NCBI GenBank assembly: GCA_002269645.1
Contig: NIVC01000105.1
Coordinates: forward strand, 597,992 to 661,991
Direction: 5' to 3'
Source of the DNA: Macrostomum lignano
Taxonomy: Eukaryota
DNA: 64,000 nucleotides
The notes under the pieces were generated by a model. It made no database searches. It was given only the letters and a program-made list of their open reading frames with translations, and had not been told where the DNA came from. Both the position numbers and the translations under genes were made by a program. Positions 1-29,038 of the stretch are shown here, piece by piece (positions within the stretch are counted from its first letter, which is position 1; every line of letters begins with the position of its first letter).

Positions 1-1160
1 ACGGATAAGTCTCAGAGCTATCTTTGAGATGAGAACTTGGTTATTTTACGCCCCACGGGCAAATGACTCAAGAAATACTACGGCTGAACGTTAACGAATG
101 AAATTAATGGCTAATTTAATAATGCCGGTTATTATTGAGCTCGGTTTAAAATAAAAAGCAGGCGAGCACGGAATAAAGATAATATTATTACTAATGCACG
201 AGAGATGGATTCGCTTGCTGCGGCGCCGGTGCGCTAGGTCGAACTTAATAAACGGAACGGTTAATTAATGAAAACAACTATTAAATTGAAGGAGACGAAA
301 ATAACAGGAAGTGGTCGTAGTGGTGGAGGAAGGGCGGAGAAAGAAGTTGAGGAAAAACAGGGCACAAAAAGCGGCATAAATAATCAAAAGGGGACGCTGA
401 CAAACACTGGAAACAGACGTTGGGCAACAAAATTCACGGGATGGAATAGGCTCAAATACGTTGGGACACCGCGCGGATAAACAAAATTCAACATAGGGAA
501 CGACGAAAAACAGTGAAGGGACGCGACCGGGCCACGGAAAGGAAGGGGAGCTGGGCAAACGATGGACAAAAATTGGGGTGAAAAGACAGCGGATGGGACG
601 GTATATTATAGTTTTGAATGTGCTTCATATTATTAAAAATTAGGTTCATAGTTACTTACTAACTACTGAATTCACGCCTCAGATTTCACGCCCAAAAATG
701 ATGAAACTGAAACAGTGAAAATAAATAAATAAACGATTGCGCAAGTTATATAACCTTTGCGCACACAATCACAGGCCTAGACGTGCTAAAATAAGGGAGA
801 AAAAAAAGGTATCTAAAAAGGGTATCTAGATTGAATGGATTAATTGGTGTGATAAGAGGTACTTTAGAAGGAATATACGAATGGTACGCTCCTGCATCGC
901 TTCTCTGATTATAGTATTTACGATGGACATATGGCCCATCTAGGGGTTCTTTTTTCTCCTGGGTTAATGAGAGTACCTAAAGGAGGAACTACGAGTAATG
1001 TCGAGTATTCATATACTTGGCTCAGTCTATAAGAGGAGATCTCACGTTCCGTTCGTAATCACGTGACAATTACAAATAATCAAGCTTCTGATTATCTAAC
1101 TCTCGCTGCTTGGAGTCTATCTTATAGAACTCTGGTCTGAGAGGTTACCTGGTTTTACCA

Positions 1161-1350
1161 CTGCTCGAACGATGGGCGCTGCTGCTCGCACGACGGGCGC
1201 TGCTGCTGCTGCTCGCACGATGGGCGCTGCTGTTCGCACGGCGGGCGCTGCTGCTGCTACTCGCACGATGGGCGCTGCTGCTCGCACGACGGGCGCTGCT
1301 GCTCGCACGACGGGCGCTGCTGCTGCTGCTCGCACGATGGGCGCTGCTTC
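1161..1350 (-). repeat. GC-rich 21-30 bp tandem repeat inside the MULE, encoding (A)nPIVR/PVVR repeats on the minus strand
   Basis: Units GCTGCTGCTCGCACGA(T/C)GGGC; ORF 1117-1476(-) reads AAAPIVRAAAAAPVVRAAAPVVR... Confidence 0.85.
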
Positions 1351-1585
1351 TCCAATCAGCAGCTGCTGCTGCGGGTCCAATGACTGGGCAGATTGGCCGA
1401 CTGGCGCTGTCGCAAATGAAGTGGTGAAGACCGTGGCTGCTGCAGACCTCGAGGGTGCCGCCATTGACGATCCCACGGCATGCTTTTAATTAGGCTGAAT
1501 GGTGAGCGCTGACTTAGGTGAAGCAGCCAGGCGTTGAATTCCTGCGTTTAACCAGTAGATAGTTTCGCAAGGGTTCTGCAGTCCA

Positions 1586-3807
1586 TCACATTAAGTACAT
1601 GTAAGTATCAGTAGAGGCAGCAGCATTTTTGGTCTTACTGTCGGCTGACATTCTAATAAAATATTTTCCAACAGTAGCGCCGATGGGTGGTGGATGACCA
1701 ATTCGCTTGTTAACGATGACGCTCCGCGACGATACTGCTGCTGTATCGTTCAGGCTGTTGCGCACGGGCGTGTGAACATTTGCCACTCAGCTGCCGGCTC
1801 AGCAATTGGACTGGCACTTCGAACTGAACCGAAACCCTGCAGAAATGAAGTGGCGTAAACTGAGCAATGCGAAGGTAACGCACCAAGTAAGTAAGGTAAG
1901 ACTGTAGAATAAAAAAAGGCTTACAGTGCCTTCATCCATAGCGTCCAAGTCAATATCGATTTCGATTCCAATACTCTTAAGCCGATAAACAAGACGTCCT
2001 CTGGTGAACTCTTCCAACAGTGGTAAAAATTCGAGCATAGACTTGGAGCGGCCGCCAAGCACGTCGCGCCTCACTGTCCGGTGGTACACCTCGACACTTC
2101 CTTCGCTGTTACGGAAGTCACGCGTGAATGCAGTGCCAGTGAAGTAGCGCTGCGCGTCAACCATCATTCCACTAAAGAGTGGAAAATAGGCATACATGTC
2201 AACAACACGTTTTGCCAATCTCTCGTTCACATACGCACTCTGTATAGCCATGGCGCGATCATGGCCACGTTGACAGTCAGCCTTGATTTGCTGCAGTAAA
2301 AGAGTCGCGTGCGCGAAGAACTGCGACGAGTCACGAATTTTTGCCGAAGGCTCTGCTCCAATTTGAGAAAATTCACATTCGTCTTCAACGTCAGTTGTTT
2401 TATCTTCACCAGACAAGAGGGCTTCAATTACGGGTTGCGCCTATCGAGCATCGATCTGAAGCAAAACAAACAAAAAACTTTGCAGATGGCGCCGACCTTC
2501 AGCCGCATCTTGACTTGCCACAATGTTGGCAAAGCCACGCATGTACACTGTACGAATTGCAGGTTCTGCGCATTTTACTTCCTGCCAATTGCGAAATTCG
2601 TTAATGACATGGCTCCGGCCAAGGACAATTGCAGTGCGCTGCTTAACTTGCTCCAATGTTGCTCTTAAAAATTTTGGCACTCCTGCTTGGCCGTTGGCTG
2701 ACTCTAGGCTGATCAGGTAGCACCATCGAATGTACTCCTTAATATCAAGACCGCAGAACACTATGATGAGGGAATGCAGCGTAGGCCAGTTGAAATCGGT
2801 AACGATTTTCGCTATTCTTAGCTTTCCACAACCAGGAACTTGCTCTAAATCTTGACGCCATTTAGCTAACATGCAAAGCAGTTGAGCTGTTGTGTGGTGA
2901 CACGATACCGCATCAAGGACGGATACTTGATTCAATCCTTTGCCTGGATCACCTGGAAGTACAAGAGCGTAGTGGTACAACGCCTTGTCTGGCATCCCAC
3001 CAGGCCAATGGCAGATCGAAGCTCCAGTTTAGTCTATGACTAGATTGATGGGGATCTTTAAACGTTTCATCGTCTGCAAAAGTTCCGCCAGCAACTTCAC
3101 GTGACATAAGTTGAACACTGACGGAGTGGGGCCATCAAATTCAATCTTGACGTAAGAGCGAAGACGTTCATCATTTTGAACTTTGAGCAGCTTTGAGCAG
3201 CTTTCAACATCACTGTCCTGGCATTGCTTTTCTTTAGACTTTTTGTAGTTTCTGATGTTCAGTAGCGTTCTTTGGGACGGCATCTGCCGGAAATCATCGA
3301 CAGACGCGGCAATAGATGCTTGAGCTGCAGCAATGGATCCCGTCTTGGTTTTCGCCTTAACTGCAGAGTCACGCACCTTTCCTGCGATGAGTGGGTGGGT
3401 GGGAACCAACTGTATCTTGGTTGCTATGTATTTGCTGCCAGAGGCTATTAAGGCCTTCTAGTTGGATGGGTGGCCATGTCGGTTCCTCAGAGTCTTCAAG
3501 CAAAGCATCATTGACAGCTTCAGGCTCTTCCATGATTTCACATTCAAGCAGGACTTCTTTGGCTGCATCAAGAAAGAACACGACATCTATTCTGCTGCAA
3601 ATCGCACCTGATGATTTTTATATTGCTTTCCGTGTACGCGGACTCACTTAAAGAGTTCATTTCATGTAAGAGCCTGTCGAAAACCTTTGAGCGAGCAACA
3701 CCAGACTCGTGCATGAGAGCATCAATTGTAACAGCATCTTTAAGATTTTTCAGCGCTCGCAGAAAATCTTCATCACGACGCACACAGCTGCGTTCCTGAA
3801 AGTGCAA
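1586..3807 (-). pseudogene. MULE/NOF-like DDE transposase pseudogene
   Basis: ORFs 3029-3409, 2441-2995 and 1799-2416 share one frame, separated only by single in-frame stops (TAA 3029-3031, TAG 2441-2443). Motifs: LVID*TG (first catalytic D), LYHYALV, IVTDFNW (second D), VLGRSHV (CxxH-like), FPLFSGMM, NSEGSVEVYHRTV (E). Upstream pieces 3369-3581 and 3568-3807 are frameshifted, and one shift is explained by an extra GGGT unit near 3391-3403. A likely intron (GTAAGC...TGCAG) follows the catalytic domain. Confidence 0.65.
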
Positions 3808-4132
3808 TGTATAGGCTCCATTTTATTCAGACAAAAATGCTTATCAATAAAATAACAGCAGCTGTTAGGATGAAGTTCTGCATTTTATCCTAGATTTTCA
3901 CAGCATCAACTAACCTTCAGCGAATTCTGTATGGAACTTAAAACAATGAGATCAGAAGCATAGACTATGAAGAAAAAGAATTTCATGGCTTTCATAATAG
4001 CAGGATGAGCTAAAATTTAGCAAATTGTGTACTAAGCATAAATTTAATGGGATCTCTTCTATGACGTCATAAGGGACAATAAATGAATAATGCATTAAAC
4101 TTAAAATTTAGTTGAATAACTTAATGTTAATG

Positions 4133-4535
4133 TTTTAGGTCCCTAACAGAGGCTAGCAATAAAAACAAATGCAGAAAACACAATTGAATCTGTATATTGT
4201 GCCAGTAGCTAAATTGGCTTTTTCTGAACTAAATGCTAAGCCCACTGACTGTTTAAAATAAAATCAATCAATATTTAGTAGTAAATAGTATATGCCAATT
4301 GTGCTTTTAGGTCCCTGATAAAGGCTAGCAATGAAAACACATAAAACACAATTGAATCTATATATTGTGCCAGTAGCTAAATTGACTTTTTTGAACTAAA
4401 TGCTAAGCCCACTGACTATTTAAAATAAATCAATCAATCAATATTTAGTGGTAAATAGTACATGCCAATTGTGCTTTTAGGTCCCTGACAGAGGCTAGCA
4501 ATGGAAACACTGAAAACATAATTGAATCTATATAT
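4133..4535. repeat. About 171-bp AT-rich direct tandem duplication (about 2.3 copies) inside the MULE
   Basis: TTTTAGGTCCCT(A/G)A..GAGGCTAGCAAT...CAATTGAATCT.TATATTGTGCCAGTAGCTAAATTG recurs at about 4133, 4305 and 4475. Confidence 0.85.
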
Positions 4536-7178
4536 ATTAAAGAAGTTTAAAATTTGGATATTTGGGGGCATTGGCTAACATAAGCATAAGTTAGCCACTA
4601 TTGTTCTTCTGTATTACTTTATATAAGCAAGAGCACTGTTTATCAAAGCAGATGTCCCCATATAACATGTTAAACTCAAATGAATATAGATAGGAGCCAA
4701 AGAATAGCTAGGCCCCTTAATCTATATATTAAACTGCATTAGAATATATGTCTAACTCTAACATTGATATTTATAATTATAACTCTTGATTTATTTTAAT
4801 GTCAATATTTACTGTAACTTAATAGGCAATGCTTTGCTTTAGTAGTATTTAAATCAACGAATGAGTGCTTGGAGAGTTTACAAGTTATGCTAGTGCTAGA
4901 CTAGGCAAGATTGGAAGAGTCTTAATATTAATATAAGTAGGTCTATAGATAATGAAAAGCTTTTACAACATGTTGTGCTAACATACATACATTCTTGTGC
5001 TAAAAGTGACATTGCAGATCCATTTCAGCAATAATGTACTAAGAATAAGTGAATAACCACAAGTAAAGTAAATCATATTGCTAAGAGTACAATCATTATT
5101 TACTTACTATTTAATTACTAACTAATTAGCAATCACTATCTACATACTAACTATTTATTATTTCACTTTTAGTGATATTTACGCTCACTTAATTGCTCAA
5201 GTATGCAATAGACAATATGTGTTTAATCTCATGATGCAACACAGGTTCGAAGAATCCAATACCATACCATATATACAGTAGTTAGTGATCAACCTCAACT
5301 GCTCGGCGAGCCTTTACAGTGGTCTTGCGCACGGAATTTAAATGGGTGCTATTTTTGTTAAAGTTATAAATATTCCATTGATATTTACAAACTTTGTAGA
5401 ACATATAAATCAAATCGGATTAGTACGCATGGTTGCGCAATGATTAGTGAATAGAAATTATAGAAGCTCAATACATGCGCAATCTCTGCTGCGATTAAAA
5501 TTTGATCACTCCCTTTTCACTCCATTATAAGAACACAAAAACTTTTTTTCTCCCTTATTTTAGCACGTCTAGGCCTGTGATTGTGTGCGCAAAGGTTATA
5601 TAACTTGCGCAATCGTTTATTTATTTATTTTCACTGTTTCAGTTTCATCATTTTTGGGCGTGAAATCTGAGGCGTGAATTCAGTAGTTAGGGTGCGTTCG
5701 AGTGACTTAAAATGACTTAAACTGCCATTTGAACGTCCTTAGTAAAACAAATGTTAAGCAGACTAAATGTAAAAATAATCTAGGTAAATGATAGTCAAAT
5801 TACAATTGAGAAATAATTCAATTTCTAAAACCGGTCTAAGATTAAAAAACGTCGCCTATACTTCTTCCAACTCAACCTGAACGCCTAGGCACCGTTTTAA
5901 CTTCGCTCGCAATTACCACATTTAATCGTAATTGAATATTTTGTATTCTTCACCTTTGTTCTATCATTTGCTTTCACGTCTTTTTGCTCAGTTCGCTGCC
6001 CGTCATTATAGTCTTTGAATAATTGCTTAGTACTAATATTGTTTATTTATTAATTGTTATTACGTAGTAGTTTATTTGGACTTGGAATATAGTCACTATT
6101 ATTGTTGCTACTGTTATTATTTTTCTATTGGAGTTTTGTACTTTTTCAGCTTGGTTCTTATTCTTCAATATAGTATCTGAGTGAACTTCATGTTATAGTT
6201 TTGTCTTTCTATTTATTCCGTAGCTATTGTAATACCAAGGAATTATTCACTTTGGTTAAATCATATTATTTTATTGCTATCTGGCCTATTTTTTTCTCAA
6301 TGAATAGTTGACTGACTTACCTTGTTTTTTATTCTTCTGCTTGTTTGAATATAGTAATTAGCTCCTTATTTATTATCTTTATTCATCACAGTCGACTTAT
6401 ATAAACCAAAAAAAATATTTCTTTCAAATATACCTCTGCATCAATAAGTTTCATATATTTTTTGTATTTTGTGCCAATCTCTGTAACTTTGTTTACAGTT
6501 TCTCTTGTTGCATATACTCATTTTTTGCAAGTAGTGTTAATCTGCACCGCTGGATAACAATGCCTGTATTTGATGTTTTCATAGAAAATGGTGGACAATT
6601 GTGTAGGCTTCTTGTGGAGTCGACTAATTACGACACCGCCGTGCAGTATTTGGTCGGAGGTAGGCAACTTTTTGTTTCTGAAATGACTACTATATAGATT
6701 ATCTGAGTAGATGCTGCTATATAGATGCTGCCCCTTCGTACATGTAGTTGAATATATCCTGCTTGCATACACCCAGCAACTGCAACGCAAGATAATGGAT
6801 TGCTGAGGCTAACACTGAAAGATGTTGAGACAACAACTCGAATTGTCGATGTTTTTGACAACATCGATGACTCTCGCATTCCATTTGCGACTAATGAGTT
6901 TCAACGTCAAGGTACTGTTCGACTCACATCGGTTCATGTGATGTTCAGTTCATAGCATTCGCGTTACCATTTGCCAGTTTCAAATGGCAGCATGAATTAA
7001 ATGATTTCTCGTTGATCTTCTGTTTCAACTGTTTAAATATGAAATACTTGTTCTGCTCTACATATATAGCCTTATGCAAAAGAGCTACTGCGTATGTGTG
7101 CTTTGTGGACATATTGGATTGCAATCAGTGTACTTTTTTAGCATCAGTCTATCAACTAATTCAACCTTATTTTCTCAG

Positions 7179-8306
7179 CGCAGTGCCGAGGTCACGAAGA
7201 GCATCCGGTTTGGTCACAGTGCCATGCTCGAGAAGAGCAACCGGCCAAGTCACATAGCACGGGGCAGGACGAGGAATCAATTCCGACAAAGTTGCATCAA
7301 ACATGGGGACTTGCAGAGAGGGAGGCCTTTCTGAAGCTTGCCATTGAGCACAATCTAAAGCAATTGGATGGTGTTCGTCCGGCCGAAAAGTATGACACCA
7401 TAGCCCACGAGATGCGTGAAATGGGCTTCTATCGTGAAGTCTCGCAGTTGAAGGCTCAATGGTACAATGAGAGGAACAGATTCTGGTACGCACGATCGAA
7501 TGGGGCTGCAGTTGCAGATGTAATTTTAAAAAAATTGTTGCTGATAAAGTTTACTTAACTTTTGTGTTGCATTTCAATGAATAATTTCAATAGGCAGTTC
7601 AAGCATCCTCCAACTTGAGTCAGTCATCGGAACGAGTTAACCGGTCTCCAGCTACAAAGAAAAGTGCCGGTAAGATTATTTTATCTTTGACATGAGGTTA
7701 TGTGATCTATCGCTGTTTGGTCATTATTTCTGTGGGTTACATACAGATACGCAAGCAAAAATTTTTGCATTTATAGATCCTCGCATTAGTGCATGTCGAC
7801 AGTGGCAAGCTTTGCTGTCGGACGAGGAGAGAGATCACGCAAGTACAGCTCGTGTGGAACAAGGTGGTCCAACAGCAACAGCTCCTACAGGTATACATGT
7901 AAGTTCTTGGTCAAATATTTTAATTCCCTTGAAATATGGATCATGTTCATGTACACGAGAGTGCGCATTCTATTCTAATTCGAATTTTCAGACATCTAGG
8001 AAAAGAAGGAGTGGTGCATCCGAATTGGTGCAAACCATTCGGGGGTTTCAAGATTCTACGACCACGGTGATCTTGCGTGTAACCTCTCGCGCCACAGAAG
8101 TCGAAATGTCTAACAAGGAGTTGATGTCTGGTCTACTTGACCGCATCACTCGTGTAGAGGAAACCCAGCTAGAAATTCAGCGTGAGAGAATCGCTGTAGA
8201 ACGACAGCGTTTGGAAAAAGAACGACACGCTTTGGAAGTGAGAGAGAAAGAGGTGGAACTGATGAATAGGATGCTTGAGTTTTGTAACAGAAATGGGCAA
8301 AAATGA
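7179..8306 (+). CDS. Harbinger Myb/SANT-like (trihelix) DNA-binding protein with C-terminal coiled coil; 5' exon(s) not resolved
   Basis: Exons 7179-7519, 7594-7669, 7777-7898 and 7992-8306 splice in frame with GT/AG ends. TWGLAEREAFLKLAIE...YDTIAHEMREMGFYREVSQLKAQWYNERNRF is a trihelix Myb/SANT pattern. The C-terminus (RVEETQLEIQRERIAVERQRLEKER) is coiled-coil-like. The start codon was not identified. Confidence 0.8.
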
Positions 8307-8579
8307 AACAGAATCGGAATTGAATCCGACTAAAGTAACGACTTTAGTAAAGCAATGTAAATGTTTACAAGTTTGCTATTTGAAATCATCAATGAAGCAT
8401 TGTTTCAATGTTCAGACAAACAGTTATGTTGTATGTTTTATGTTATAAATGACTATGTTGTAGTTATGTTGCAACGTAAGCGTTTTGAACTATCAAAATT
8501 ATATCAAGATGCTTCTATCAAGCATCAACCAAACAAGTTAGAAAGATTAGTAAGAATTAAAACGGATTAACAATTAACG

Positions 8580-9566
8580 TTAATTGTACTTCAGAGAGAA
8601 ATTGTGCAGGCAGCATATTGATTCAATTAGCTTGCAGGTGGACTCCATGCTGTCCGAATTTATGTAATTGATTCGTTGCCATCGACTTGATAAAATTCCA
8701 AAAGTTCTCTCGACACACTGACGCAGTTTACTAAGCTTCTTATTGAACTGTTTTTTCCCCGGAGAAAGATTGCGTCCCTTATATGGTGTTAGCAAGTAGT
8801 CGGAACATGGATATGCCGAATCACCAATCAGAAGAAATCCCCACTGGACGTGTAAATGCTGTATTTCTTGTCGAGCAGAAGAATATTGAAAAGCTCTTGC
8901 ATCGTTCGAACTACCGGGCCAGCCAATGAAGTAGTCAATGATGTAGGTCGAACTGGTGCTAATTACCTGTAACTTGACGGAATGAAATTGCTTCCTGTTG
9001 TAATATGACTCGCCATTGTCAGACGGACATCTTATTTTGACTTCCTTTACGTCAATGGCACCAATAATACTTGCTGTAAAGAAATTTCTAGATCGCTGAC
9101 TGAATACCTGAGCATGCTTGTGGCACTCTTCATAGGATGGAAATCGAACCAGATCTCTGCAAAATCCACTCTCGGACATTGCACTTAGAACCCTTCGGAT
9201 TATAAGACAAACCGTGCTCTTAGATAAGTCAAAAACTGTTCCAATAGATTCGTAGGACTCCTGGGTTGCTAAATAGCGAAGAAAAACCAAGACCATTGAA
9301 ATAGCGGTCGTTCCTTTTGGCGAATGCAGAGTTAGGAACGTTGCTAGTTGCAGAACTAACGACTGGACAGCAGTTCGAGGCAATCTAAAATAATCTCGGA
9401 ACTGGTAGTCGTTGAAGTGGTAAACAGTAGTCTCAACGAACTCGGCTACTTTTGCTCTAGGTTCCTTAATGGACCTGGCTACAATAGCTTGAACTTCACT
9501 TACAGAGTCACATTGTTGCTGTACAAAGTCACGAACTTCACCAGTAAAAGAATTTGCTGGTTCCAT
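8580..9566 (-). CDS. Harbinger transposase (HARBI1-like, DDE_Tnp_4 family), 328 aa, intact
   Basis: Uninterrupted ORF from ATG at 9566 (MEPANSF). Motifs FRDYFRL, IIGAID, YYNRKQFHSVKLQ, GWPGSSNDAR, LIGDSAYP, FNKKLSKLRQCVERTFGILSSRW and CCLHNF, with acidic catalytic residues present. Confidence 0.93.
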   Translation of the reverse strand: MEPANSFTGEVRDFVQQQCDSVSEVQAIVARSIKEPRAKVAEFVETTVYHFNDYQFRDYFRLPRTAVQSLVLQLATFLTLHSPKGTTAISMVLVFLRYLATQESYESIGTVFDLSKSTVCLIIRRVLSAMSESGFCRDLVRFPSYEECHKHAQVFSQRSRNFFTASIIGAIDVKEVKIRCPSDNGESYYNRKQFHSVKLQVISTSSTYIIDYFIGWPGSSNDARAFQYSSARQEIQHLHVQWGFLLIGDSAYPCSDYLLTPYKGRNLSPGKKQFNKKLSKLRQCVERTFGILSSRWQRINYINSDSMESTCKLIESICCLHNFSLKYN

Positions 9567-12500
9567 TGCAAAATTTAAATAATAGAGGACAGCAATATAC
9601 AATCTATAGACAATATGATTTGGTATACTTCGTATATAAGTTGACTGTGATGAATAAAAAATAGTGACAATTAATTTCAACCAATCAAGAAACAAGTCAA
9701 CAGAAGCAAAGAAATATGACAAATTAAGCACAATATATAAATTAATAACTAGTAATGTCCAATGACAATGAATGAGAGCTAATTACTATATTCAAACAAG
9801 CAAAAGAATAAAAAACAAGGTAAGTCAGTCAACAATACATTGAGAAAAAAATAGGCCAGTTAGCAATAAAATAATATGATTCAACCAAAGTGAATAATTC
9901 CTTTGTATGATAGAAAGACAATACTATAGAAAACTATAGATACTATATTATAGAATACAATATACAATACTATACTATAGATACAATACTATAGAATAAA
10001 TAGAAAGACAAAACTATAACATGAAGTTCACTCAGATACTATATTGAAGAATAAGAACCAAGCTGAAAAAGTACAAAACTCCAATAGAAAAATAATAACA
10101 GTAGCAACAATAATAGTGACTATATTCCAAGTCCAAATAAACTACTACGTAATAACAATTAATAAATAAACAATATTAGTACTAAGCAATTATTCAAAGA
10201 CTATAATGACGGGCAGCGAACTGAGCAAAAAGACGTGAAAGCAAATGATAGAACAAAGGTGAAGAATACAAAATATGGACGAACACCATCCAATTGCTTT
10301 AGATTGTGCTCAATGGCAAGCTTCAGAAAGGCCTCCCTCTCTGCAAGTCCCCATGTTTGATGCAACTTTGTCGGAATTGATTCCTCGTCCTGCCCCGTGC
10401 TATGTGACTTGGCCGGTTGCTCTTCTCGAGCATGGCACTGTGACCAAACCGGATGCTCTTCGTGACCTCGGCACTGCGCTGAGAAAATAAGGTTGAATTA
10501 GTTGATAGACTGATGCTAAAAAAGTACACTGATTGCAATCCAATATGTCCACAAAGCACACATACGCAGTAGCTCTTTTGCATAAGGCTATATATGTAGA
10601 GCAGAACAAGTATTTCATATTTAAACAGTTGAAACAGAAGATCAACGAGAAATCATTTAATTCATGCTGCCATTTGAAACTGGCAAATGGTAACGCGAAT
10701 GCTATGAACTGAACATCACATGAACCGATGTGAGTCGAACAGTACCTTGACGTTGAAACTCATTAGTCGCAAATGGAATGCGAGAGTCATCGATGTTGTC
10801 AAAAACATCGACAATTCGAGTTGTTGTCTCAACATCTTTCAGTGTTAGCCTCAGCAATCCATTATCTTGCGTTGCAGTTGCTGGGTGTATGCAAGCAGGA
10901 TATATTCAACTACATGTACGAAGGGGCAGCATCTATATAGCAGCATCTACTCAGATAATCTATATAGTAGTCATTTCAGAAACAAAAAGTTGCCTACCTC
11001 CGACCAAATACTGCACGGCGGTGTCGTAATTAGTCGACTCCACAAGAAGCCTACACAATTGTCCACCATTTTCTATGAAAACATCAAATACAGGCATTGT
11101 TATCCAGCGGTGCAGATTAACACTACTTGCAAAAAATGAGTATATGCAACAAGAGAAACTGTAAACAAAGTTACAGAGATTGGCACAAAATACAAAAAAT
11201 ATATGAAACTTATTGATGCAGAGGTATATTTGAAAGAAATATTTTTTTTGGTTTATATAAGTCGACTGTGATGAATAAAGATAATAAATAAGGAGCTAAT
11301 TACTATATTCAAACAAGCAGAAGAATAAAAAACAAGGTAAGTCAGTCAACTATTCATTGAGAAAAAAATAGGCCAGATAGCAATAAAATAATATGATTTA
11401 ACCAAAGTGAATAATTCCTTGGTATTACAATAGCTACGGAATAAATAGAAAGACAAAACTATAACATGAAGTTCACTCAGATACTATATTGAAGAATAAG
11501 AACCAAGCTGAAAAAGTACAAAACTCCAATAGAAAAATAATAACAGTAGCAACAATAATAGTGACTATATTCCAAGTCCAAATAAACTACTACGTAATAA
11601 CAATTAATAAATAAACAATATTAGTACTAAGCAATTATTCAAAGACTATAATGACGGGCAGCGAACTGAGCAAAAAGACGTGAAAGCAAATGATAGAACA
11701 AAGGTGAAGAATACAAAATATTCAATTACGATTAAATGTGGTAATTGCGAGCGAAGTTAAAACGGTGCCTAGGCGTTCAGGTTGAGTTGGAAGAAGTATA
11801 GGCGACGTTTTTTAATCTTAGACCGGTTTTAGAAATTGAATTATTTCTCAATTGTAATTTGACTATCATTTACCTAGATTATTTTTACATTTAGTCTGCT
11901 TAACATTTGTTTTACTAAGGACGTTAAAATGGCAGTTTAAGTCATTTTAAATAATATATTGGCCATACAGGCTAATAGCCTGAGCCAACTTCTTACTACT
12001 ACTACTACTAGAGCTATTTAAGTCACTCGAACGCACCCTTAGTTTCATACTTCAATTACTTTTGGCATCCCGCCTGCCAATGCCAAAGAGACCCCTCTCC
12101 GGGTGCTAATATTTCAAAGGCTCCTTATGCCCCCTGCATATGCCACTAGGTCCGATTTAGTGATATATAATTAATAATAATGTATAATTATTTAAATAGG
12201 GCCTACCTTGCTTTCAGACAATGTTTTCAATTAATCTCTTTTGAAAAAATTAACAATAAAGGCTAAAGCATGAATTTGCATTGAAATTTTGAATAGTGTT
12301 TTAAATACATAGACCTAGGTCCTAGGCCCTAGGTCTAGGATCTTTTTATTAAAGCAAATTATTAATCATTAAAGCATTCCTTTTGGCCATAGACATCATT
12401 TTCTGGCGTGTCATTAGGCCCTACATTGACTGATTGACGCACCATTTAAAACTAGAAAATAATATTGCAAAACAAACTGGAAGATCGCCAGAAAAAATTA

Positions 12501-26048: not shown

Positions 26049-29038
26049 ATGTCCGAAGCAGACGATAACAACGTCGATTTCGACACCCAACTTCGCCTGG
26101 AACGCGAGGAAGCCGCCGCAAAAGATGCTGCCAATGGCGTCTCGAACCAACGGACGAATGATAATGAGGCCAATAAAAAAACCCGAACTGACGAGGACGG
26201 CACCGTGTTCGATTGGGACGAGGACAAACAGGCTTGGTTTCCTAGAATCGACTCGGAAATGCTCATTCGCTATCAGCTTGGCTACGGCACCTCTGAGCAG
26301 CAGCAGCAGCAGCCGATTGGAGGTCCGGAGTTCGACTCCCTGCCGCCGGAGGAGCAAGAGAAGGCTAGGGAATATTGGGAGCAGTATTATAATTCCCAGG
26401 AGTACAGGGACTGGTACGCTCGGTACAGTGATTCAGCGACTACTGCCGCAACTGCTGGGCAAGGTATGGGATTTTATTTGAGCTATTTTTATCCCCAATT
26501 GTTTGTTAGAGTGTGTAGTACATTGTGATCCCAGTTTGGGATCTATAACACATTTTCATCCCAGTTCGGGATCTATAACACAGTTTGATCCCAGTTTGGG
26601 ATCTATAACACATTCTAATCCCAGTTTTGGATCTATAACATATTCTAATCCCAGTTTTGGATCTATAACACATTCTAATCCTAGTTTGGGATCTAAAACA
26701 CATTCTAATCCTAGTTTGGGATCTATAACATATTCTAATCCCAGTTTTGGATCTATAACACATTCTAATCCTAGTTTGGGATCTAAAACACATTCTAATC
26801 CTAGTTTGGGATCTAAAACACATTGTGATCCCAGTTTGGGATCTATAAAACATTTTGATCCCAGTTTGGGATCTATAACACATTTTGATCCCAGTTTGGG
26901 ATCTATAAAACATTTTGATCCCAGTTTGGGATCTATAACACATTCTAATATCCCAGTTTGAGATCCATCACACTTTTGATCCCAGTGTAGGATCTACAGC
27001 ACTTTTTATCCTAGTATGTGATTTATAACACTTTTGATCCCAGTTTGGGATCTATACTACATCGGGATCCCTTTAGTGCCTGAGTTCCAATGCCATCCAA
27101 TGCCAAACAAATAATTTCCCCCTTAAACCCTTATTAAAACCCCTGCAGACGGTGAGTCTTCAACGGCAAGCCAGCAGCAGCAGCAGCAGAGCAGGAAACG
27201 CGAATTGAAAAAGAAGAAGCCAGACCAGCAGCAGCAGCAATGGTTCGAGGTGCCGCCAGACCAGAACACGCACGTTTTCGTGCAGAACCTGCCGCTAGAC
27301 CTGACCGAGCCGGAGTTCATCGAGTTCATGTCCAAGTGCGGCATGGTGCTGCACGACCCGCTGACGCGCCGGCCGAAGGTCAAGCTGTACACGGACGAAG
27401 ATGGCAATTTTAACGGCAGCGCCAGGTGCGGCTACATCAAGAAGGAGTCGGTGGCGCTGGCCCTGCAGATTCTGGACGGCTACCGGCTGCGAGACTGCGA
27501 GGTCAGCGTGGAGCCGGCCAAGTTCCAGCCCAAGGAGGGGTTCGACCCCAGCAAGCGGAGGAAGCTCACTAATAAGGAGAAGAAGAAGGTGAGGGAGTCG
27601 GGTGTCGGGTTAAAGGGAATAGGGAGCTTTGTTCACTGGGAAAGGGGAATTGGGAAGTATGAGGAGAATGCAGATTAGGGAATTACGGGGTGAATTCAAA
27701 TGAGGGATTTTAGGGAGAATTTAGATTGGGGAATTTAGGGGAGAATTCAGATTGGGGAATTATGGGAAGAATTCAGATTGGGGAATTATGGGAAGAATTC
27801 ATATTGGGGAATTATGGGAAGAATTCAGATTGGGGAATCATGGGGAGAATTCAGATTGGGGAATTATGGGAAGAATTCATATTGGGGAATCATGGGGAGA
27901 ATTCAGATTGGGGAATCATGAGGAGAATTCAGTTTGAGAAATTATGGAAGAGAATTCAGATAAGGGAATCATGAGGAGAATTCAGATTGGGGAATTATGG
28001 GAAGAATTCAGATTTGGGAATTATGAGGAGAATTCAGATTGGGGAATCATGGGGAGAATTCAGATTGGGGAATCATGGGGAGAATTCAGATTGGGGAATC
28101 ATGAGGAGAATTAAGATTGGGGAATTATGGGGAAGAATCTAGATTGGGGACTTATGGAAGAGAATTTCGACTAGATTAGGGATTAGGGAGAATTCAGATT
28201 AGGAAAATCCAGACTCGCTCCAACAGGTCGCATTACCGGCCCGCTACCAAACCCGCAGGTGAAAGAGCAGCAAACCCGCCTGTTGGCCTGGGCGCCCGCC
28301 GATTCCGCCGCCTCAGCAGACGGCGGCCTTGGCGTCAGCGCAGGCGCGAACGCCGCCCGCCGCTCCGACCGAGTTTTGGTGATTTCCAACGTGTTTGACC
28401 CGTCCGAATTCGACTCGGATCCGCTGCTGTTGGAGAAAATCCGCGACGATGTTGTGACCCGCTGCGCCCAGTACGGCCCGGTGCGCAAGGCCGTGGTGCA
28501 CGATCGCAACCCCGACGGCGTCGTGCTGGTCACCTTCGCCGAGTCCGGCCAGTGCAGCCTGGCTCTCAGCCAGCTCGATGGTCGGATGTTCCGCGCCGGC
28601 CGGGTGCTCAAAGCCGCCATCTGGGACGGCCGGACCAAGTACCACGTGGAGGAGACGGAGGAGCAGGCTGCCAGGCGGCGGGCCATCTGGGAGCGCCAGA
28701 TTCTTGGCGAAGATTGTCGACAGACCGGCCTCCCGACTACTGAGAGGCCGCTTGAAGGTCAGCCTGAAGGTCATCCTGAAGGTCATCCTAAAGGGCAACC
28801 TGAAGGTCATCCTGAAGGTCAACCTGAAGGTCATCCTAAAGGGCAACCTGAAGGTCATCCTGAAGGTCATCCTGAAGGTCATCCTGAAGGTCATCCTGAA
28901 GGTCATCCTAAAGGGCAACCTGAAGCTCATCCTGGAGGCCATCCTGGAGGTCAACCTGAAGGTCAACCTGAAGTCGAAGCTGAATCAACCACAGACGAAG
29001 AAGAGCCAATAGCTTCGTCGTCAGATGACGATAATTAA
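26049..29038 (+). CDS. htatsf1: HIV Tat-specific factor 1 homologue (17S U2 snRNP component, RRM + UHM), 544 aa, 3 coding exons
   Basis: Exons 26049-26463, 27149-27588 and 28259-29038 (phases 1,0; 1635 nt). Motifs FDWDEDKQAWFP, NTHVFVQNLPLDLTEPEFIEFMSKCG, KVKLYTD, ESVALALQILDG, SVEPAKFQ, RVLVISNVFDP, LLLEKIRDD, DRNPDGVVLVTF and AIWDGRTKYHVEET match Tat-SF1/CUS2. Confidence 0.95.
26525..27070 (+). repeat. 30-bp minisatellite in htatsf1 intron 1
   Basis: Unit GATCCCAGTTTGGGATCTATAACACATTTT, about 18 copies, with an internal hairpin GATCCC/GGGATC. Confidence 0.95.
27700..28205 (+). repeat. 26-bp minisatellite in htatsf1 intron 2
   Basis: Unit ATTGGGGAATTATGGGAAGAATTCAG, about 19 copies. Confidence 0.93.
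28752..28975 (+). repeat. Coding 12-bp repeat in the last htatsf1 exon (EGHP/EGQP/KGQP)
   Basis: GAAGGTCA(T/A)CCT units in frame before the stop at 29036-29038. Confidence 0.9.

What the first reader, a model, noticed from the sequence alone, without database searches (positions are those of the whole stretch)
5690..12038. Coding-intact Harbinger turned into a giant fold-back: right end is a 1.69-kb inverted copy of the left end, including the 5' part of its own Myb gene
Seen: 5690-7380 is near-identical to the reverse complement of 10277-12038. I noticed one substitution near the terminus plus a 71-bp insertion, and the arm lengths (1691 vs 1762) differ by exactly 71. The copy includes part of the Myb/SANT exon and the DNA upstream of it, and ends abruptly mid-exon with no microhomology at 10276/10277. 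Known: Harbinger TIRs are usually tens of bp. Inference: the duplicated Myb upstream region now points along the minus strand toward the transposase (ATG 9566), so one promoter could drive both genes. Read-through would also give a kb-long hairpin RNA able to feed siRNA/piRNA silencing of the element. This would be an apparently complete transposon carrying a built-in self-regulating hairpin.
Basis: partly seen in the sequence, partly recalled or inferred. Interest (0 to 1): 0.8.

Follow-up and report, generated by a model that had tools for sequence, protein, structure and literature searches.

The report
Harbinger transposon with extended inverted ends
One copy of a two-gene Harbinger transposon in an unidentified animal genome already had inverted ends of about 0.7 kb, and one end has grown to about 1.7 kb by copying the start of the element's own Myb gene backwards; this kind of rearrangement is already known from other transposons and its effect here is untested.

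Summary
5690-7380 and the reverse complement of 10277-12038 differ by one substitution and one 71-bp indel, and TTA duplications flank both ends. Both genes look intact: a 328-aa DDE transposase and a six-exon, 362-aa Myb/SANT gene.

9633-10276, directly upstream of the transposase, also mirrors left 5936-6403. So the element already had TIRs of about 0.7 kb that reach the TATA box of each gene.

The right end was therefore not replaced. A 1,445-bp inverted copy of 5936-7380 sits inside the old right TIR. One of its junctions is seamless and lies in homology; the other is blunt (10276|10277). Every difference between the arms lies in the outer 317 bp, which fits an original right terminus.

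The best reading is a template switch between the long TIRs during break repair, followed by end-joining. This is TIR extension, as described for Galileo.

The transposase keeps its own promoter copy, so the "one promoter drives both genes" inference is largely moot. A Mu killer-like hairpin RNA is possible but untested. An assembly artefact cannot be excluded, and no other copies could be found. Interest is modest.

The parts
5687..5689 (.). Left target-site duplication, TTA
   Evidence: Sequence. It matches 12039-12041.
5690..5711 (+). Left terminal 22 nt, identical to the right terminus
   Evidence: two matches in the window, 0 expected by chance.
5690..6403 (+). Inferred pre-existing left TIR (about 0.71 kb; segments a 5690-5935, b 5936-6223, c 6232-6364, then the TATA block)
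   Evidence: against the old right end it is 99.4% identical over 517+17 nt, 95.5% over 133 nt and 24/26 over the TATA block. Three indels of 71, 73 and about 115 bp separate the matching blocks.
5690..7380 (+). Left arm of the present 1.69-kb inverted repeat
6378..6403 (+). Conserved promoter block with TATATAA upstream of the Myb gene
   Evidence: Further copies lie at 9633-9658 (-) and 11254-11279 (-).
6560..8306 (+). Myb/SANT-like gene, 362 aa. Six exons: 6560-6659, 6777-6911, 7179-7519, 7594-7669, 7777-7898, 7992-8306.
   Evidence: Manual gene model with all introns GT-AG. Pfam Myb_DNA-bind_4, E=8.8e-7. Exons 1-3 and 6 are conserved at protein level in the relatives L049 and L001.
8580..9566 (-). 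Transposase, 328 aa, single exon
   Evidence: Pfam DDE_Tnp_4, E=2.8e-33, profile positions 1-158 of 158. D172, D249 and E286 are conserved. 74% identical to P0001, with dN/dS about 0.06.
9633..10276 (-). Inner part of the old right TIR, with the transposase promoter block at 9633-9658. It is cut off at 10276.
   Evidence: 9776-9908 matches 6232-6364 at 127/133, and 9989-10276 matches 5936-6223 at 286/288.
10276..10277 (.). Blunt novel junction: old right TIR joined to the reverse complement of position 7380, inside Myb exon 3
   Evidence...CAAAATAT|GGACGAAC..., with no microhomology.
10277..11721 (-). New 1,445-bp inverted copy of 5936-7380: TIR segments b and c, the promoter, Myb exons 1-2 and 202 nt of exon 3
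   Evidence: no differences from the left arm across this stretch; it lies 1,445 bp from the older direct copy at 9982-10276. The truncated Myb ORF is 146 codons plus 24 more before a stop.
11722..12038 (-). Outer 317 bp of the right end, inferred to be the original right terminus. It holds the only differences between the arms: the T at 11926 and the extra 71 bp at about 11951-12021.
12039..12041 (.). Right target-site duplication, TTA
   Evidence: Sequence.

Best explanation
This is a single insertion of an autonomous PIF/Harbinger transposon. Its two genes converge: the Myb-like gene is on the + strand and the transposase on the - strand.

Before the rearrangement the element was about 4.9 kb. 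Its terminal inverted repeats of about 0.7 kb each ran inward as far as the TATA box of one gene.

A break then occurred in or near the right TIR, either spontaneously or after transposase cutting. The terminus-side end paired with the homologous but inverted left TIR, either of the same element or of a sister copy. DNA synthesis ran past the end of the homology, through the Myb promoter and exons 1-2, and into exon 3, up to the position matching 7380.

The new strand then let go. It was joined without homology to the other broken end at 10276.

The result is a 1,445-bp inverted insertion that lengthens the inverted repeat from about 0.7 to about 1.7 kb (TIR extension).

What is shown: the anatomy, the intact reading frames, and the placement of the differences. 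What is inferred: the repair mechanism, and whether the event happened at this locus or in a parent copy.

Likely consequences, also inferred:
- Both termini and both genes are kept, so the copy may still be mobile.
- There is a third promoter copy that would drive a truncated Myb ORF.
- Any read-through transcript could fold into a duplex of about 1.7 kb that now includes Myb mRNA sequence.
For: 1. A third copy of left 5936-6403 sits at 9633-10276, with older-looking divergence: 95.5% over 133 nt and indels of 73 and about 115 bp. So long TIRs existed before the new event.
2. The new segment has one seamless junction in homology and one blunt junction. That is what homology-primed synthesis followed by end-joining would leave.
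3. There are no differences over the 1,445 bp of new copy, and both differences between the arms fall in the outer 317 of 1,762 bp. If the two differences were placed at random, the chance of this is about 0.03.
4. TTA is present on both sides.
5. The TIR-homology block ends at the same TATA motif upstream of each gene.
6. The same class of event is documented elsewhere. Galileo shows TIR extension by recruitment of internal and ORF sequence (PMC3573991, PMC4168063). Template switching during gap filling in TIR elements is described in PMC8277862.
Against: - There is only one copy and no read data. A chimeric read joined to true right-end reads through the identical TIR sequence would give the same pattern.
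- Short-read polishing could have erased real differences inside the arms, which would weaken point 3.
- TTA is one of only two usual Harbinger target sites, so the matching flanks are weak evidence.
- The absence of microhomology at 10276|10277 is slightly unusual. PMC8277862 found microhomology at at least one breakpoint in 67.6% of captured-gene elements (Pack-TIRs), with a median length of 2 bp.
- The closest relative shows no promoter-reaching TIR, so 'native 0.7-kb TIRs' is inferred from this one copy.
Confidence: 0.55

Rival explanations
1. Assembly or read artefact. An inverted chimeric read (for example from whole-genome amplification or a library chimera) created the 10276|10277 junction. 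The assembler then rejoined the true right end through the identical TIR sequence.
For: The arms are perfectly identical over 1,445 bp. The junction is an inverted, non-homologous join of the kind chimeric reads produce. The species is absent from every collection searched and its best match for a conserved host protein is only 53% identical. It is therefore an obscure animal, and low-input sequencing is conceivable, although that is my own inference.
Against: This is not a simple A-then-reverse-complement-of-A palindrome. There is a 2.9-kb spacer, a distinct right terminus (the 71-bp extra segment and one substitution) and a distinct right flank. The longer chimeric path would have had to win over the true reads. 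The only other inverted repeat above 80 bp in the 64 kb is a short 148-bp pair with two junctions of its own, which is not chimera-like.
Confidence: 0.17
2. Two independent copies. A second copy inserted nearby in the opposite orientation, and a deletion then removed the right terminus of copy 1, the spacer, and all of copy 2 except its first 1.76 kb.
For: Local hopping and deletions between neighbouring copies are common (general knowledge). A blunt junction fits a deletion repaired by end-joining.
Against: - It needs three events.
- The deletion end in copy 1 would have to fall so that the outer part of copy 2 continues the old right TIR in perfect register.
- Both differences between the copies would have to fall in the outer 18% of the arm by chance, about 0.03.
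- The outer flanks carry the same TTA.
Confidence: 0.1
3. The 1.7-kb fold-back form is itself a mobile family variant. It arose elsewhere and transposed here as a unit.
For: Both 22-nt termini are intact and TTA flanks both ends. Both genes are intact. In Galileo, extended TIRs are found in transposing copies (PMC4168063).
Against: No second copy could be found in the window, nor any related sequence in the searchable collections. [quoted passage not shown] Arm identity of 100% suggests a very recent event.
Confidence: 0.15

Closest known systems
Galileo (P superfamily, Drosophila): TIR extension by recruitment of internal and ORF sequence
   Same: Both are cut-and-paste elements with TIRs of several hundred bp. 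In both, internal unique sequence, including part of an ORF (more than 500 bp in one D. willistoni copy), is duplicated in inverted orientation and so lengthens the TIR. For Galileo this is attributed to recombination or break repair between the two nearby inverted repeats (PMC3573991, PMC4168063).
   Different: The superfamily differs: this is PIF/Harbinger, with a 3-bp TTA duplication and two genes. Here the 5' part of the accessory Myb gene is recruited rather than the 3' end of the transposase ORF. Here the copy is coding-intact, whereas the longest-TIR Galileo copies in D. mojavensis were never nearly complete. Only one copy is known here.
Mu killer (maize MuDR derivative)
   Same: [quoted passage not shown] Both could give a kilobase-scale hairpin RNA (PMC3440606).
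   Different: Mu killer is a separate, non-autonomous locus that is transcribed from a flanking gene, and it has been shown to make siRNAs and to silence MuDR in trans. Here the inverted duplication sits inside an apparently autonomous copy, in an animal, and there are no expression or small-RNA data.
Ac/Ds inverted duplications from alternative transposition (maize)
   Same: Rearranged copies of a cut-and-paste element that carry inverted duplications are linked to de novo siRNA silencing (bioRxiv 10.1101/2020.01.07.897926).
   Different: Those junctions are made by transposase at element termini. Here neither side of 10276|10277 is a terminus, so the junction was not made by a transposition reaction.
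Foldback (FB) elements
   Same: Both have very long inverted arms able to fold back.
   Different: FB arms are built of tandem subrepeats, and FB is its own family. These arms have no tandem arrays, and the element encodes a Harbinger transposase.
Canonical PIF/Harbinger elements (PIF, Pong, Harbinger3_DR, Turmoil)
   Same: All have a DDE_Tnp_4 transposase, a Myb/SANT-like second gene, a 3-bp TWA duplication and identical termini.
   Different: TIRs of 14-25 bp are reported for plant members (PMC2213677). Here they were about 0.7 kb before the event and are about 1.7 kb now.

Membership tests
PIF/Harbinger superfamily | DDE transposase of the DDE_Tnp_4 / IS5-like type with an intact catalytic triad | tested here: met
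   PF13359, E=2.8e-33, full profile. D172, D249 and E286 are conserved across 10 homologues.
PIF/Harbinger superfamily | A second gene encoding a Myb/SANT-like DNA-binding protein | tested here: met
   PF13837, 29.7 bits against a cut-off of 27; intact six-exon model; relatives conserve exons 1-3 and 6.
PIF/Harbinger superfamily | 3-bp target-site duplication, TWA | tested here: met
   TTA at 5687-5689 and at 12039-12041.
PIF/Harbinger superfamily | Terminal inverted repeats | tested here: met
   the 22-nt termini are identical; the homology extends for about 0.7 kb.
PIF/Harbinger superfamily | Several copies or evidence of mobility in the genome | not testable with these tools
   No other copy in the window. 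The species is not in the searchable collections. The metagenome hits to the terminus are chance matches of 17-23 nt.
Galileo-type TIR extension (a process, not a family) | Internal unique or ORF sequence duplicated in inverted orientation next to a pre-existing long TIR | tested here: met
   the reverse complement of 5936-7380 is inserted into the old right TIR.
Galileo-type TIR extension (a process, not a family) | The extended form is found in copies that have transposed | not testable with these tools
   Only one copy is available.
Mu killer-like hairpin silencer | Inverted duplication covering a TIR plus the 5' part of a transposon gene | tested here: met
   the arms cover the TIR, the promoter and 146 codons of the Myb gene.
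Mu killer-like hairpin silencer | Transcription through both arms, small RNAs from the arms, and silencing in trans | not testable with these tools
   There are no RNA data. No canonical AATAAA lies between the convergent genes, which neither shows nor excludes read-through.
Foldback (FB) elements | Arms composed of tandem subrepeats | tested here: not met
   no tandem arrays between 4535 and 13854.

The most novel reading that the evidence does not exclude
The extended arm makes this copy a built-in, Mu killer-like trigger in an animal. Before the extension, the 0.7-kb TIRs stopped at the TATA boxes, so a TIR hairpin would hold only untranscribed upstream DNA. The new arm adds the 5' UTR and exons 1-3 of the Myb gene. 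A read-through transcript would therefore yield double-stranded RNA that matches Myb mRNA and could silence the whole family in trans. A related reading is that repeated TIR extension is how this lineage came to give both genes the same promoter, since the relative in L001/L049 lacks the shared upstream region.
Probability: 0.08. Interest if true: 0.65.

Novelty: new variant of a known kind. Interest (0 to 1): 0.33.

Why it matters
If it is real, this is a clean, dated example of how long terminal inverted repeats grow. There are two layers: one at about 95-99% identity and one at 100%. The newer layer has a homology-primed junction on one side and a blunt junction on the other. It occurs in a superfamily that is usually described with short TIRs, and in a copy that still looks autonomous.

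It would extend the Galileo observations to PIF/Harbinger. It would also offer a candidate locus for testing whether an autonomous animal DNA transposon can generate its own hairpin trigger for small-RNA silencing.

If it is an artefact, it is a useful warning about inverted chimeras inside elements with long TIRs.

Tried and rejected
Searches that led nowhere:
- Other copies or the species. Exact-protein look-ups of the transposase (328-aa and 383-aa versions) and of a host ORF found nothing.
- A metagenome scan with the 17-nt terminus gave 47 loci. None matched more than 17-23 nt of the element, so they are chance matches.
- The word-indexed homologue search with the Myb protein found nothing. 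The exhaustive search found only four proteins.
- Host identification failed. The best hit to the Tat-SF1-like protein is 53% identical (Macrostomum lignano), so this is an animal, but the species is unknown.
- Rfam found nothing in the window.

Readings considered and rejected:
- Nested insertion of one copy into another. Neither side of 10276|10277 is an element terminus.
- A junction made by alternative or sister-chromatid transposition. Rejected for the same reason.
- A simple missed-adapter palindrome. The 2.9-kb spacer, the distinct right terminus and the distinct right flank rule it out.
- Capture of a free fragment by end-joining at both ends. The 11721|11722 side is seamless and in register with the old TIR.
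- Foldback family membership. The arms have no tandem subrepeats.

Unresolved:
- A test for long TIRs in the nearest relative. The Myb-upstream region (L049) and the transposase-upstream region (L001) share nothing: local alignment score 30, against 451 for the equivalent window regions. This suggests that the 0.7-kb TIR is specific to this lineage. However, the two contigs are short and may not come from one element.
- The coding region inside the neighbouring 148-bp inverted repeat has no Pfam or PDB sequence match.
Full report
**Observation**

The repeat finder reports 5707-7380 against 10277-11950 as 1,674 nt, about 100% complementary. A global alignment of 5690-7380 (1,691 bp) with the reverse complement of 10277-12038 (1,762 bp) shows one mismatch (5731 G / 11926 T). 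It also shows one 71-bp indel just inside the terminus, with the extra bases at about 11951-12021.

The terminal 22 nt, GGGTGCGTTCGAGTGACTTAAA, occurs only at the two ends, and no matches are expected by chance. TTA flanks both ends, at 5687-5689 and 12039-12041. The inner junction reads ...CAAAATAT|GGACGAAC... and has no microhomology.

**What the element is**

The minus-strand ORF 8580-9566 (328 aa) matches Pfam DDE_Tnp_4 over the whole profile (E=2.8e-33). It also gives a weak HTH_Tnp_4 match. In an alignment with nine homologues, the residues D172, D249 and E286 lie in the conserved GAID, GDSAYP and VERTFG motifs. The closest protein is 74% identical. It comes from a 2.7-kb contig (L001) of a sequencing-run assembly. 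Against it, dN/dS is about 0.06, with dS saturated.

On the plus strand I built a six-exon gene by hand, with every intron GT-AG. The exons are 6560-6659, 6777-6911, 7179-7519, 7594-7669, 7777-7898 and 7992-8306, giving 362 aa. Exon 3 carries a Myb_DNA-bind_4 domain. Exons 1, 2, 3 and 6 are conserved at protein level in two contigs of the same foreign sample (L049, L001). That supports the gene model.

So this is a two-gene PIF/Harbinger element with convergent genes, and both genes look intact. The left arm ends at 7380, inside exon 3, after 146 codons.

There is a third copy of the arm. 9989-10276 matches left 5936-6223 at 286/288. 9776-9908 matches 6232-6364 at 127/133. A 26-nt block at 9633-9658 matches 6378-6403 at 25/26. 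That block contains TATATAA. It lies 157 nt upstream of the Myb ATG on the + strand and 67 nt upstream of the transposase ATG on the - strand.

I joined 9600-10276 to 11722-12038 and aligned the result to the left end. This gives a continuous inverted repeat of about 0.71 kb:
- 99.4% identity over the outer 534 nt;
- 95.5% over the next 133 nt;
- 24/26 over the TATA block;
- three indels of 71, 73 and about 115 bp.

So before the latest event the element was about 4.9 kb. It had TIRs of about 0.7 kb, each ending at the TATA box of one gene.

In symbols, the present order is a b c U1 U2 c' b' | U1' c' b' a'. The right end was not replaced. Instead, a 1,445-bp inverted copy of 5936-7380 (now 10277-11721) sits inside the old right TIR. 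Its right-hand junction is seamless and in register with the old TIR. Its left-hand junction is blunt.

**Where the differences lie**

The 1,445 bp of new copy has no differences from the left arm. The substitution and the 71-bp indel both lie in the outer 317 bp, 11722-12038. If two differences were placed at random along the arm, the chance that both fall there is about 0.03.

The pattern is what one expects if the outer 317 bp is the element's original right terminus and the rest is a fresh copy. The old TIRs differ mainly by indels elsewhere too, which fits this reading.

**Most likely mechanism (inferred)**

1. A double-strand break occurred in or near the right TIR. It was either spontaneous (long inverted repeats are fragile) or followed transposase cutting.
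2. The terminus-side 3' end paired with the inverted left TIR of the same element or of a sister copy.
3. Synthesis ran beyond the homology, through the Myb promoter and exons 1-2, and into exon 3.
4. The new strand was released and end-joined to the other broken end at 10276.

Repeated rounds of invasion and release during this kind of repair, and template switching in gap filling of TIR elements, are established (PMC8277862; my own knowledge of the P-element gap-repair literature). The same outcome is described for Galileo in Drosophila. There, internal sequence, including more than 500 bp of ORF, was recruited into a TIR that was already long. The authors discuss break repair or recombination between the two nearby inverted repeats as the cause (PMC3573991, PMC4168063).

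**Rivals**

*Artefact.* An inverted chimeric read, rejoined to true right-end reads through the identical TIR sequence, would give the same picture, and I cannot test this without reads. Arguing against it are the 2.9-kb spacer, the distinct right terminus and flank, and the need for the chimeric path to beat the true reads. I give it about 0.17.

*Two copies plus a deletion.* This needs three events, an in-register coincidence at 11721/11722, and both differences falling in the outer 18% of the arm. About 0.10.

*The fold-back form arose elsewhere and transposed here as a unit.* This is compatible with the same mechanism and cannot be told apart with one copy. About 0.15.

A nested insertion or a junction made by the transposase is excluded, because neither side of 10276|10277 is a terminus.

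The duplicated Myb upstream region does point towards the transposase. However, the transposase already had, and keeps, a homologous upstream region with its own copy of the TATA block directly in front of it.

The new copy (TATA block at 11254-11279, - strand) lies 1.7 kb upstream. It would first express a truncated Myb ORF of 146 codons plus 24 junction-encoded codons.

The hairpin idea has precedent. Mu killer is a partial inverted duplication of mudrA plus its TIR, and it is thought to give a hairpin RNA of about 4 kb (PMC3440606). Inverted Ac duplications are linked to the start of silencing (bioRxiv 10.1101/2020.01.07.897926).

One point sharpens the idea. The old TIRs stopped at the TATA boxes, so only the extension puts transcribed Myb sequence into the potential duplex. 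Nothing here tests transcription or small RNAs.

**Is the 0.7-kb TIR a family trait?**

In the only relative available, the 480 bp upstream of Myb (L049) and the 606 bp upstream of the transposase (L001) share nothing. The local alignment score is 30, against 451 for the equivalent regions of the window element. This hints that the promoter-reaching TIR is itself a product of an earlier extension in this lineage, so there would have been two rounds. The contigs are short, however, and may not belong to one element.

**Context and limits**

The host is an animal. The window encodes a rhodopsin-type receptor fragment, a Vestigial/Tondu motif, a LOTUS domain and a Tat-SF1-like protein. The best match to the Tat-SF1-like protein is only 53% identical (Macrostomum lignano).

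The species is not in any collection I could query. The metagenome hits to the terminus are chance matches. There is no second copy in the window. The key tests, which are other copies, reads across the junction and RNA data, could not be run.

**Verdict**

This is a new variant of a known kind: TIR extension by an inverted templated insertion, here in a coding-intact Harbinger. It has modest interest (0.33) and a real but unquantified risk of being an artefact.

Noticed in passing
window 659-806 and 5543-5690: A perfect 148-bp inverted repeat whose right arm ends exactly at the Harbinger's left terminus and TTA. Read outward, both arms end ...GAATTCAGTAGT|TA|G, and each holds two copies of the motif TTCACGCC. 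The simplest reading is a second young TIR element of about 5.0 kb (659-5689) with a TA duplication. The Harbinger would then have landed on the TTA formed by that element's last T plus its TA. Only the order 'the other element first, then the Harbinger' gives matching TTA flanks. That an insertion should hit this exact boundary is an unexplained coincidence, and a rearrangement linked to the Harbinger end is not excluded.
   Followed up: partly
window 1799-3807, minus strand: A run of open reading frames (79, 70, 126, 184 and 205 aa) lies inside the 148-bp inverted repeat. They look like one interrupted coding region of about 650 aa. There is no significant Pfam match (weak hits only, E of 0.057 or worse) and no PDB sequence match. 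It could be the transposase of the neighbouring element or a host gene.
   Followed up: partly
window 13854-57780 (many sites): The window is unusually dense in minisatellites. There are dozens of arrays with 12-41-bp units and about 10-110 copies, often about 0.3-1.8 kb long, lying between what look like exons. They produce many spurious long ORFs.
   Followed up: no
window 11951-12021: The 71-bp segment found only in the right terminus is unique in the window. It is bounded by TTAAA on both sides and contains a 15-nt palindrome, CAGGCTATTAGCCTG. It moves the two terminal GACTTAAA motifs from 10 to 81 nt apart. This could be a natural left/right asymmetry of protein-binding sites, or a slippage deletion in the left end.
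   Followed up: partly
window 9909-9981: A 73-bp AT-rich stretch rich in ACTATAG-like repeats is present only in the old right TIR copy, between segments c' and b'.
   Followed up: no
window 26049-29038, plus strand: A host gene for a Tat-SF1/CUS2-like protein with two RRM domains. A hexapeptide-repeat tail (PEGH/PKGQ) is encoded by a 12-bp tandem array at 28753-28973.
   Followed up: no
L001 and L049 (Logan sample SRR24204725): A related Harbinger lies in an unidentified sequencing run. Its transposase is 74% identical, its Myb exons are 45-66% identical, and the genes have the same convergent layout. These are the only close relatives found anywhere.
   Followed up: partly
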